Positions 56,907 to 58,779 of a stretch of DNA of 64,000 bases are shown one piece after another. A program made the position numbers and the translations under genes. The DNA is from Camelus dromedarius (taxonomy: Eukaryota): the NCBI RefSeq assembly GCF_036321535.1, contig NC_087451.1, positions 27,590,001 through 27,654,000 on the forward strand, given 5' to 3'. How positions within the stretch are numbered: the stretch's first letter is position 1; each line of letters begins with the position of its first letter. The notes beneath the pieces were generated by a model. It searched no databases and was not told where the DNA came from. It saw only the letters and a list, made by a program, of their open reading frames with translations.

Positions 56907-58779
56907 ATGTAGCTGAATTTCAGTGGCCTTCGGGCCCTGGTGACAGGGGCAGGGAAAGGTAGGTGTGAGCCGGGCAAGTGGGGGTGTGGGAGAGGCCAGA
57001 CCTGAAGCCTCACAGGCCCACGTTGGGGGTCTGCGTGTCCCTTCATGCCTGTCACAGCCTCTCCTGCCAGCACCTGCCCCCCGACTCCACCCACCGAGCC
57101 ACAGACCCGGGCCTGGGCCGCTCCCCGCCACCCAGCAGGCCCCACTGGGACCGGACATGAGCCCCTCTCTGCTCAATGCAAGGCCCCTCCAGAAAGGGCA
57201 GCCTTCAGACTGGGCAGCCCAGGTCTCTTCCCCCAGCCTGGCAGGAAGGAGCTGCCCTCTGGGCCTCCCTTGGCCGGATCCCAGGTGCTGGGCCTCTGAC
57301 CCCCACCACCTCCTGGGCCAGCACCCTCTCACTGCTCTTTCCTGAGCAGCAAAGCTGCAGCCCCCAGCCCCAGACTTGACCCAGACGTGTTGGGCCATCT
57401 GCCTGACAGTTGCACCCTTGCAGGGATTGGGCGCGACACTGTGAAGGCCCTGCATGCCTCAGGAGCCAGAGTGGTGGCCATAAGCCGCACCAACGCCGAC
57501 CTGTTCAGCCTCTCCAAGGAGGTGAGGTGTGCAGCCCACTGCAGCCCAGGCCCGTGACCCTCAGAACCTGCCAGAACCATCCCTTTGGTCACTGGCCAAT
57601 GCCTCCTCTCAGTGCCTCGGGATAGAGCCTGTGTGCGTGGACCTGGGTGACTGGGAGGCCACAGAGCAGATGCTGGGCGGCGTGGGCCCCGTGGACCTGC
57701 TGGTGAAGAACGCTGCCGTGGCGCTGCTGCAGCCCTTCCTGGAGGTCACCAAGGAGGCCTTTGACAGGTGGGGAGTGGGAGAGGAGGTGGACTGGGGAGA
57801 GGGCTGCTGAGGAGGCAGAGCGGGCATGGCCACTGTCTGTCTGTCTGCAATGCCCCTAGGTCCTTCGATGTGACCCTGCGCTCTGTGTTCCAGGTGTCCC
57901 AGGTGTGCCGGTGGGAGGGTGTGGCTTAGCACTGACGTGGCCCAGGTTGGGGTGTGCTGGGTGGGGTCAGGCTGCCCCCTCTCTTGGTTTCCAGATGGTG
58001 GCCCGAGGCATGATCGCCCGCGGAGTGCCTGGCTCCATCGTCAATGTCGCCAGCATGGTGGCCCACGTCACCTTCCCCAACCTTGCTGTCTACAGTGAGT
58101 CCCTCTACCCAGCCTGGACCCCCCCCCCGAACCCCACTCCATGCAGGAGCCGCTGGACTCCCGGGCTGGGCCGCATGCAAAACGGGCTGAATCCCTAAGG
58201 GCCCGTGGGGCTGCGCTCCGTCCACGGGCTCCACCAAGGGCGCAATGACCATGCTGACCAAGGCCATGGCCTTGGGCTGGGGCCATACAAGGTGCGTGTG
58301 GCGGCGCTGGGGGCGCCGGGGGCCCGGACCTGGGGGGGAACGGGTGGTGGGTAAGGCTGGGGGCTGGGGGCGAGAACTGGGCAGAGGGTGTCAAAGGTAA
58401 GTAGGGGCTGTGGGGCGAGGCTCGTCGGCCACCTGAGGCTGCCCCTCCGGCCTCCCAGCCCCAGATCCGGGTGAACTCCGTGAATCCCACGGTGGTGCTG
58501 ACGGCCATGGGCCAGCTCCTCTCGGCCGACCCCGATTTTTCCCGGAAGCTGAAGGAGCGCCACCCGCTGAAGAAGTCTGCAGGTCAGCGGGGCTTCGCGG
58601 AGCGGCGGGCGCGGCTGGGGCCAGGCTCAGCCAGCGGAGCCGAGCCGCGCTGACCCCGCCCTCCGCCCGCCGCAGAGGTGGAAGACGTGGTCAACAGCAT
58701 CCTTTTCCTGCTCAGCGACCGCAGCGCCTCCACCAGCGGCTCGGGCATCCTCGTGGACGCCGGGCACCTGGCCTCCTAG
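56907..58779 (+). pseudogene. CBR2: Unprocessed pseudogene of lung-type tetrameric carbonyl reductase (CBR2, DCXR paralogue)
   Basis: 8 exons with DCXR-identical phases: 56907-56958, 57424-57521, 57613-57767, 57860-57902, 57995-58094, 58228-58291, 58465-58582, 58676-58779. CBR2-diagnostic peptides [83 protein letters not shown]. Lesions: TAG at codon 2, intron-5 acceptor AG>GG, 1-bp deletion in exon 6. Confidence 0.93.

What the first reader, a model, noticed from the sequence alone, without database searches (positions are those of the whole stretch)
56907..58779. CBR2 (lung carbonyl reductase) is a multiply disabled unitary pseudogene in this camelid
Seen: (1) ATG TAG CTG AAT TTC, a stop at codon 2 (56910-56912); (2) intron-5 acceptor reads ccacGG|gctccacc (58226-58227) where DCXR has cacAG|gctccacc; (3) exon 6 is 64 nt versus 65 in DCXR (TTG G-G CTG, base missing at 58275/58276), giving TGA at 58472-58474. 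Established/recalled: mouse and pig have a functional tetrameric lung CBR2 (pig starts MQMNFSGLRA, so CAG>TAG is a single transition), mouse Cbr2 lies beside Dcxr, and human lacks it. Inference: an independent, fairly recent camelid loss of an airway carbonyl/xenobiotic reductase, with the exon structure still intact. Automated annotation may mislabel it as an 'L-xylulose reductase-like' gene.
Basis: partly seen in the sequence, partly recalled or inferred. Interest (0 to 1): 0.75.

Follow-up and report, generated by a model that had tools for sequence, protein, structure and literature searches.

The report
Dead CBR2 gene in Old World camels
The dromedary's copy of CBR2, the lung carbonyl reductase that mouse and pig still use, sits in its ancestral place next to DCXR but is a real, multiply broken pseudogene; two of its three breaks are shared with the wild Bactrian camel and none with alpaca.

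Summary
All three lesions are at the stated coordinates: TAG at codon 2 (56910-56912), GG instead of AG at the exon-6 acceptor (58226-58227), and a 64-nt exon 6 (base missing at 58275/58276) that gives TGA at 58472-58474.

The gene is the CBR2 orthologue, not a DCXR copy. It is 80-88% identical to named CBR2 proteins and about 62% to DCXR. It nests in the mammalian CBR2 clade with strong support. It has the same eight exons and lies 2.5 kb upstream of an intact DCXR.

The window is dromedary assembly GCA_036321535.1. A second dromedary assembly carries all three lesions. Twenty sequencing runs from seven studies hold the words spanning lesions 2 and 3.

Camelus ferus shares the TAG and the GG but not the deletion. 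Alpaca has none of the three. It has its own 1-nt deletion and 26-nt duplication, yet its coding sequence looks constrained (omega 0.04, against 0.53 in Camelus).

So this is a Camelus-lineage loss, not a family-wide one. It is older than the dromedary/Bactrian split. I found no paper reporting it.

It is an ordinary kind of event, a lineage-specific loss of a detoxifying enzyme.

The parts
56853..56858 (+). TATAAA about 50 nt upstream of the ATG; candidate core promoter, still present
   Evidence: Read; consensus only, not tested
56907..56958 (+). Exon 1 (52 nt), encodes the start and the TGAGKG cofactor-binding motif
   Evidence: same length as in intact CBR2 genes
56910..56912 (+). Lesion 1: TAG stop at codon 2 (CAG in alpaca; Q in 40 of 56 CBR2 proteins)
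   Evidence: shared by both dromedary assemblies and C. ferus
57424..57521 (+). Exon 2 (98 nt)
   Evidence: AG/GT sites
57613..57767 (+). Exon 3 (155 nt). Carries P52L (57616-57618) and N82K (57706-57708, NNAA motif becomes KNAA) at columns invariant in CBR2.
57860..57902 (+). Exon 4 (43 nt); N107T at an invariant column (57873-57875)
57995..58094 (+). Exon 5 (100 nt); CBR2-type [11 protein letters not shown] segment; S135A (58049-58051), dromedary only
58198..58199 (+). Upstream cryptic AG used by the submitter model P0329. It adds 28 nt, which together with the 1-nt deletion keeps the frame but replaces the segment that holds catalytic Lys153 with unrelated residues
58226..58227 (+). Lesion 2: exon-6 acceptor GG instead of AG
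   Evidence: AG in alpaca, DCXR and three outgroups
58228..58291 (+). Exon 6 (64 nt instead of 65); encodes STKGAMTMLTK, including Lys153
58275..58276 (+). Lesion 3: one base missing between these two positions (TTGG-GCTG; alpaca and C. ferus have TTGGAGCTG)
   Evidence: words spanning it are held in 20 runs
58465..58582 (+). Exon 7 (118 nt); CBR2-type [15 protein letters not shown] segment; F209S at an invariant column (58576-58578)
58472..58474 (+). Premature TGA reached in the shifted frame after the exon-6 deletion
   Evidence: read directly
58676..58779 (+). Exon 8 (104 nt) with the original stop TAG at 58777-58779; Y241H at an invariant column (58765-58767)
59089..59094 (+). AATAAA, candidate polyadenylation signal
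   Evidence: Read; consensus only
61257..63037 (+). Intact DCXR paralogue (8 exons, 244 aa), the neighbour that fixes the synteny
   Evidence: 244/244 identical to C. dromedarius L-xylulose reductase P0172

Best explanation
Window 56907-58779 is the dromedary orthologue of CBR2, the NADPH-dependent lung carbonyl reductase of the DCXR/CBR2 branch of short-chain dehydrogenases. It lies at its ancestral place just upstream of DCXR and is a non-processed pseudogene.

The lesions act as follows:
- Translation from the native ATG stops at codon 2.
- Exon 6 has lost its AG acceptor, so it must be skipped or spliced at a cryptic site.
- In dromedary the exon also lacks one base, which shifts the frame into a TGA in exon 7.

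Any protein that avoids the stop would lack the cofactor-binding motif of exon 1. Any transcript spliced at the cryptic AG would lose the segment that holds catalytic Lys153. No working reductase can therefore be made.

Shown: the TAG and the acceptor change arose in the Camelus lineage, after its split from the llama/alpaca lineage and before the dromedary/Bactrian split. The deletion came later, on the dromedary side.

Inferred: DCXR and other carbonyl reductases cover whatever function remains, and the loss had little cost.
For: The lesions are read directly.

Orthology:
- Exons 5, 7 and 8 score 45-55 bits against mouse CBR2 (1CYD) and 25-28 bits against human DCXR.
- The conceptual protein is 80-88% identical to proteins named carbonyl reductase 2 and about 62% to DCXR.
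- In a 45-protein ML tree the three camelid copies form a clade (100/99). It sits inside placental CBR2 (99/98) and mammalian CBR2 (100/99), apart from camelid DCXR.

Synteny: an intact DCXR lies 2.5 kb downstream on the same strand. The order is GPS1, RFNG, this gene, DCXR, RAC3, LRRC45. CBR2 is likewise directly upstream of DCXR in ruminants.

Lesions are real:
- The second dromedary assembly, GCA_000803125.3, is 99.75% identical over 7.3 kb and carries all three.
- C. ferus GCA_000311805.2 carries the TAG and the GG.
- All 8 sampled words of a 111-nt stretch over lesions 2 and 3 are held by 20 runs of one organism from 7 studies.

Relaxed constraint in Camelus:
- Branch omega is 0.53 against a background of 0.13 (p=0.016), and it is not different from 1.
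- Six of 77 columns invariant in 56 CBR2 proteins are replaced in dromedary and five in C. ferus.

Outgroups (musk deer, otter, pangolin) have intact genes with identical exon lengths.
Against: - Read-level support is therefore indirect: assemblies, and 31-mer words in Logan contigs.
- Lesion 1 was not covered by the targeted word search. It rests on three assemblies of two species.
- C. bactrianus was not seen.
- C. ferus exons 7-8 lie in an assembly gap.
- RNA-seq runs hold 55% of the locus's words, so the locus may still be transcribed. I could not see how it is spliced.
- That no intact second CBR2 copy exists elsewhere in the camel genome is supported only by its absence from a protein search and from this 64-kb window.
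- The codon analysis uses 7 taxa, 229 codons and my own implementation.
Confidence: 0.9

Rival explanations
1. CBR2 was already functionally lost in the common ancestor of all camelids, for example through a regulatory change or a damaging substitution. The open-reading-frame lesions then accumulated separately in the Camelus and alpaca lineages.
For: The stem-camelid branch has omega 0.92, significantly above background (p=0.0016) and not different from 1. Alpaca also carries frame-breaking changes, a 1-nt deletion in exon 3 and a 26-nt duplication in exon 8.
Against: The alpaca branch has omega 0.036, significantly below 1 (p=0.0009). It shows 1 replacement against 5 silent changes and replaces none of 77 invariant CBR2 columns. 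That pattern requires purifying selection after the split. No disabling lesion is shared between the two lineages. Part of the stem signal may be conversion from DCXR: 5 of 13 stem replacements go to the DCXR state, and the similarity runs into the intron.
Confidence: 0.08
2. The lesions are assembly or sequencing errors, or rare alleles of the sequenced animal, and the species has a working CBR2.
For: Raw reads could not be inspected. Single-base indels are a common assembly error.
Against: Two dromedary assemblies from different projects, differing at 13 sites in 7.3 kb, share all three lesions. C. ferus shares two of them. Twenty runs from seven studies hold every sampled word across lesions 2 and 3. 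None of the lesions lies in a long homopolymer. Six replacements at invariant columns point the same way.
Confidence: 0.02
3. The locus still makes a useful protein from another start and the cryptic exon-6 acceptor, as in the deposited 248-residue model P0329, or by reading through the stop.
For: With the cryptic AG at 58198-58199, the extra 28 nt plus the 1-nt deletion keep the downstream frame open. P0329 is a complete ORF on the other dromedary assembly. The locus seems to be transcribed.
Against: The model starts inside intron 1, where this window has GTG, not ATG (57387). It lacks the TGAGKG cofactor motif of exon 1. It replaces the STKGAMTMLTKAMA segment, including Lys153, with unrelated residues. 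In C. ferus, which lacks the deletion, the same splice would be out of frame. Relaxed constraint argues against a maintained protein.
Confidence: 0.03
4. The copy is a recent duplicate of DCXR that decayed, not the CBR2 orthologue.
For: Exon 3 scores slightly higher against human DCXR than against mouse CBR2 (89.9 against 85.5 bits). A 200-bp stretch around exon 3 is 85% identical to DCXR exon 3 in the same window.
Against: The ML tree places it inside CBR2 with 99/98 and 100/99 support, while camelid DCXR sits in the DCXR group. Full-length identity is 80-88% to CBR2 against about 62% to DCXR. Exons 5, 7 and 8 carry CBR2-specific segments.
Confidence: 0.01

Closest known systems
Mouse lung carbonyl reductase CBR2 (PDB 1CYD) and its named orthologues in pig, deer, pangolin and others
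   Same: Same gene by phylogeny, by the eight-exon structure and by position upstream of DCXR. The conceptual translation keeps TGAGKGIG, Ser136, Tyr149, Lys153 and the CBR2-type C-terminal segments.
   Different: The ORF is broken three times. The NNAA motif is changed to KNAA, and five further invariant residues are replaced. No enzyme can be made.
DCXR (L-xylulose reductase / dicarbonyl reductase), the adjacent paralogue
   Same: Same fold family, the same eight exons with the same lengths, and tandem arrangement. Exon 3 is nearly the same in both.
   Different: DCXR is intact here and 100% identical to the annotated dromedary protein. The pseudogene is only about 62% identical to it and belongs to the other clade.
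Absence of CBR2 in humans (no functional gene beside DCXR)
   Same: Another mammalian lineage without this enzyme. In my protein searches the only primates with named CBR2 were lemurs, which fits a loss in anthropoids.
   Different: This is an independent event in a different order. The camel copy still has all its exons, so the lesions can be read and ordered in time.
Published Old World camel gene inactivations (CES3, CPA3, PLA2G2F, KRT24, TAS2R16; PMC12127551)
   Same: The same kind of event: nonsense or frameshift changes shared by Old World camels and absent in alpaca, in tissue-specific metabolic genes.
   Different: CBR2 does not appear in that paper's main text. Its screen left out genes without orthologues in human and mouse, which would exclude CBR2. 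Its supplementary tables were not available to me.

Membership tests
CBR2 (lung carbonyl reductase, DCXR/CBR2 branch of classical SDRs) | Groups with named CBR2 proteins, not with DCXR, in a phylogeny | tested here: met
   inside placental CBR2 (99/98) and mammalian CBR2 (100/99). The DCXR group is one side of a branch (100/99).
CBR2 (lung carbonyl reductase, DCXR/CBR2 branch of classical SDRs) | Higher similarity to CBR2 than to DCXR, including the CBR2-specific C-terminal half | tested here: met
   80-88% against about 62%; exons 5, 7 and 8 score about twice as high against 1CYD as against 1PR9. Exon 3 does not discriminate.
CBR2 (lung carbonyl reductase, DCXR/CBR2 branch of classical SDRs) | Eight coding exons of 52/98/155/43/100/65/118/104 nt, directly upstream of DCXR on the same strand | tested here: met
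   Only exon 6 departs (64 nt). Tandem order with DCXR.
CBR2 (lung carbonyl reductase, DCXR/CBR2 branch of classical SDRs) | SDR motifs: TGxxxGxG, NNAx, catalytic Ser-Tyr-Lys | tested here: inconclusive
   TGAGKGIG, S136, Y149 and K153 codons are present. The first N of NNAA is K in Camelus, although N is invariant in 56 CBR2 proteins.
CBR2 (lung carbonyl reductase, DCXR/CBR2 branch of classical SDRs) | Intact reading frame giving a 244-residue enzyme | tested here: not met
   Stop at codon 2, lost acceptor, frameshift. It is therefore the CBR2 gene by descent but not a working member.
Unitary (non-processed) pseudogene | Disabling lesions that are real, not artefacts | tested here: met
   Two dromedary assemblies, one C. 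ferus assembly, and 20 runs from 7 studies for lesions 2 and 3.
Unitary (non-processed) pseudogene | Introns kept, ancestral locus, functional orthologues in related lineages | tested here: met
Unitary (non-processed) pseudogene | Relaxed selection on the lineage that carries the lesions | tested here: met
   omega 0.53 against 0.13 (p=0.016); 6 of 77 invariant columns replaced.
Unitary (non-processed) pseudogene | No other intact copy of the gene in the same genome | tested here: inconclusive
   Only two SDR loci of this type lie in the 64-kb window. The only Camelus CBR2-like protein among the best 120 hits of a search of 5.8 billion proteins maps to this locus. The whole genome could not be searched with these tools.
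Recent DCXR duplicate | Sister to the same species' DCXR | tested here: not met

The most novel reading that the evidence does not exclude
CBR2 was inactivated twice, independently and recently, within one mammalian family. One event was in the Camelus stem (TAG plus lost acceptor). The other was very late in the alpaca lineage (exon-3 frameshift plus exon-8 duplication). Both followed a burst of protein change in stem camelids that was partly driven by conversion from the neighbouring DCXR. Together with the human absence and the degraded cetacean models, this would make CBR2 a repeatedly dispensable airway enzyme whose loss could be studied as a natural replicate series.
Probability: 0.35. 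Interest if true: 0.5.

Novelty: new member of a known kind. Interest (0 to 1): 0.35.

Why it matters
CBR2 is a major NADPH-dependent carbonyl reductase of airway epithelium in mouse and pig. It is widely used as a club-cell marker in mouse, and humans lack it.

A second, datable loss in a large mammal has three uses:
- It shows the enzyme is dispensable outside primates.
- It gives a lineage in which the steps of decay can be ordered: nonsense and splice lesions first, the frameshift later.
- It warns that current camel annotations carry protein models for a dead gene.

It adds one gene to the published list of Old World camel inactivations, which was built in a way that would miss it. By itself it explains no camel trait; any link to desert life is speculation.

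Tried and rejected
No read-level view and no splice junctions were obtained.
It does not discriminate CBR2 from DCXR.
- Representative P0007, which I first took as a CBR2 query, turned out to be a reindeer CBR2/DCXR chimera.
- My first DCXR exon model was off by one base in three exons. It gave a false 61% identity and was corrected.
- Looking for another alpaca assembly through P0357 found nothing on record. The alpaca lesions therefore rest on one assembly.
- No C. bactrianus sequence could be reached. Run organisms are coded, so 'organism B' (97% of words) cannot be named.
- ORFs at 52742-55193 gave no Pfam hit, so RFNG is placed only through the C. ferus fused model.
- Paper searches for CBR2 with pseudogene, camel or gene loss found nothing on this locus.
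- The stem-camelid omega near 1 was considered as evidence of an ancestral loss. I rejected it as the main reading because of the alpaca constraint.

Full report
**Observation.**
- ATG at 56907-56909 is followed by TAG at 56910-56912.
- The exon-6 acceptor is GG at 58226-58227. The DCXR paralogue in the same window has AG before the same gctccacc (62551-62552).
- Exon 6 (58228-58291) is 64 nt.

I rebuilt the gene as eight exons: 56907-56958, 57424-57521, 57613-57767, 57860-57902, 57995-58094, 58228-58291, 58465-58582 and 58676-58779. Every other splice site is AG/GT. The lengths 52/98/155/43/100/64/118/104 differ from those of intact CBR2 genes of musk deer, otter and pangolin only by the one missing base. 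Read without correction, the frame reaches TGA at 58472-58474.

**What the gene is.** Several lines show it is the CBR2 orthologue, not a DCXR duplicate.
- Translated exons 5, 7 and 8 match mouse lung carbonyl reductase (PDB 1CYD) at 46.9, 55.1 and 48.7 bits. They match human L-xylulose reductase (1PR9) at only 26.9, 28.3 and 25 bits, and they carry the CBR2-type segments [26 protein letters not shown] and [14 protein letters not shown].
- Exon 3 is nearly the same in both families and does not discriminate.
- With X at the breaks, the conceptual protein is 80-88% identical to proteins that their sources name carbonyl reductase [NADPH] 2. The best is white-tailed deer at 87.7%. It is about 62% identical to DCXR.
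- In a maximum-likelihood tree of 20 CBR2, 22 DCXR and the three camelid copies, the camelid copies form a clade (100/99). That clade sits inside placental CBR2 (99/98) and inside a mammalian CBR2 clade that includes opossum and echidna (100/99). Camelid DCXR sits with the other DCXR sequences.

**Surroundings.** An intact eight-exon DCXR lies at 61257-63037 on the same strand. It is 244/244 identical to the annotated Camelus dromedarius L-xylulose reductase. Gene calls on the fetched loci give the order GPS1, RFNG, this gene, DCXR, RAC3, LRRC45. In ruminants CBR2 also lies directly upstream of DCXR. It is so close that sheep and reindeer gene models fuse the two.

**Source of the window.** The window is identical to GCA_036321535.1, CM070325.1, positions 27,590,001-27,654,000.

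**Are the lesions real?**
- A second dromedary assembly (GCA_000803125.3) differs from the window at 13 sites and 5 indels over 7.3 kb, so it is a different animal or build. It carries all three lesions.
- The wild Bactrian camel assembly (GCA_000311805.2) carries the TAG and the GG acceptor. It has the full TTGGAGCTG, so the one-base deletion is absent there. Its exons 7-8 fall in an assembly gap, which I left alone.
- A word search with a 111-nt stretch spanning lesions 2 and 3 found all 8 sampled 31-mers in 20 runs of one organism, from 7 studies and at least 10 samples. The whole 1951-nt stretch is 96-98% held by 14 runs of two organisms.
- I could not lay reads. 

**Distribution in the family.** The alpaca assembly (GCA_048564905.1) has CAG at codon 2, AG at the acceptor and a 65-nt exon 6, so it carries none of the camel lesions. 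It has two lesions of its own: a one-base deletion in exon 3 (aligned to window 57731) and a 26-nt tandem duplication near the end of exon 8. No disabling change is shared between the two tribes. The ordered history is therefore:
1. TAG and AG>GG arose on the Camelus stem.
2. The deletion came later, on the dromedary side.
3. Alpaca followed a separate path.

**Selection.** I extracted intact coding sequences from musk deer, otter and pangolin, and from warthog. In warthog, one extra G in a G-run of exon 1 was set aside.

Parsimony counts:

| Branch | Replacement changes | Silent changes |
|---|---|---|
| Stem camelid | 17 | 6 |
| Camelus stem | 7 | 4 |
| Alpaca | 1 | 5 |

A codon-model likelihood analysis of my own (GY94 with F3x4, 7 taxa, 229 codons) gave:

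| Branch class | omega | Test result |
|---|---|---|
| Background | 0.13 | - |
| Camelus | 0.53 | above background, p=0.016; not different from 1, p=0.35 |
| Alpaca | 0.036 | below 1, p=0.0009; not different from background |
| Stem camelid | 0.92 | above background, p=0.0016 |

Independently, 77 columns are invariant in 56 full-length CBR2 proteins.
- Dromedary has replaced six: P52L, N82K in the NNAA motif, N107T, S135A, F209S and Y241H.
- C. ferus has replaced five within its available exons. Three are shared with dromedary.
- Alpaca has replaced none.

Camelus copies therefore drift, while the alpaca lineage was constrained for nearly all of its history. Its lesions, if real, are very young.

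A crude two-phase estimate gives (0.53-0.13)/(1-0.13), about 0.46 of the Camelus branch spent as a pseudogene. With a Camelini/Lamini split of roughly 17-25 Myr (my own knowledge), that is of the order of 10 Myr. The shared lesions require it to predate the dromedary/Bactrian split. This is inference with wide error.

The high stem value does not fit an ancestral loss, given the alpaca constraint. Five of the 13 stem replacements go to the DCXR state. The exon-3 region is 85% identical to DCXR exon 3 for 39 nt into the intron, so conversion from DCXR may contribute.

**How the lesions act (inference from the anatomy).**
- The stop at codon 2 ends translation from the only start that precedes the TGAGKGIG cofactor motif.
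- Without its AG, exon 6 must be skipped or spliced elsewhere. Skipping removes 64 nt and, with them, Lys153.
- The nearest upstream AG (58198-58199) adds 28 nt. In dromedary, together with the one-base deletion, this happens to keep the downstream frame.

A deposited model exploits exactly this last point (P0329, 'Carbonyl reductase [NADPH] 2', 248 residues). It starts inside intron 1 and reads exon 6 out of frame. It so replaces the STKGAMTMLTKAMA segment with unrelated residues, then rejoins the frame after the deletion. Such a protein would lack both the cofactor motif and the catalytic lysine.

Two other models also misrepresent a dead gene. The window's own assembly lists a 244-residue product over exactly 56907-58779. 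C. ferus has a 543-residue model that fuses RFNG, this gene and DCXR.

**Literature.** Searches for CBR2 with pseudogene, camel, dromedary or gene loss found no report of this loss. A 2025 comparison of all camelids lists ten genes inactivated in Old World camels; CES3, CPA3, PLA2G2F, KRT24 and TAS2R16 are named in the passages I read. CBR2 does not appear in its main text. Its screen set aside genes without orthologues in human and mouse, which would drop CBR2. Its supplementary tables were not available to me. Database annotations such as TOGA may already flag the gene; I could not check.

**Verdict.** It is a clean, datable example of a common kind of event, and it is of modest interest. 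The open points are the status of the alpaca lesions, read-level genotypes, and whether the locus's transcripts are spliced.

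Noticed in passing
L002:5692-7619 (alpaca GCA_048564905.1), aligned to window 57731 and 58741: Alpaca CBR2 lacks all three camel lesions. It has a 1-nt deletion in exon 3 and a 26-nt tandem duplication in exon 8. Yet its branch omega is 0.036, and none of 77 invariant CBR2 columns is replaced. Either a very recent second loss, a polymorphism, or an assembly peculiarity.
   Followed up: partly
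window 57608-57806 against 61990-62189: The exon-3 regions of the CBR2 pseudogene and of DCXR are 85% identical, and the similarity runs 39 nt into the intron. Five of 13 stem-camelid replacements go to the DCXR state, and stem omega is 0.92. Possible gene conversion between the tandem paralogues.
   Followed up: partly
proteins P0290 (Megaptera), P0339 and P0340 (Phocoena), P0298 (Sousa), P0323 (Delphinus): Cetacean CBR2 models are flagged low quality, truncated or carry disrupted cofactor motifs. This hints that CBR2 may also be decaying in whales and dolphins.
   Followed up: no
L008:1038-1044 (warthog GCA_016906955.1): One extra G in a G-run of CBR2 exon 1 shifts the frame. NCBI labels the product LOW QUALITY. 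More likely a homopolymer assembly error than a real lesion, since the rest of the gene is intact.
   Followed up: partly
window 56850-58800; runs X16, X17: Two RNA-seq runs labelled reproductive system metagenome hold 55% of the stretch's sampled words. That is more than the exons alone would give, so the dead locus may be transcribed with retained introns.
   Followed up: no
proteins P0007 (reindeer), P0151 and P0152 (sheep, argali), P0384 (C. ferus): Public gene models fuse CBR2 with DCXR (and with RFNG in C. ferus) because the tandem genes are so close. The reindeer chimera serves as the 50%-cluster representative and can mislead homology searches.
   Followed up: yes
window 49210-49347 and 49358-49513: Two N runs inside an AT-rich stretch (GC 0.33-0.49 at 48-52 kb).
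   Followed up: no
window 57387: GTG in this assembly and ATG in GCA_000803125.3. This single polymorphism creates the start codon used by the lesion-dodging model P0329.
   Followed up: yes
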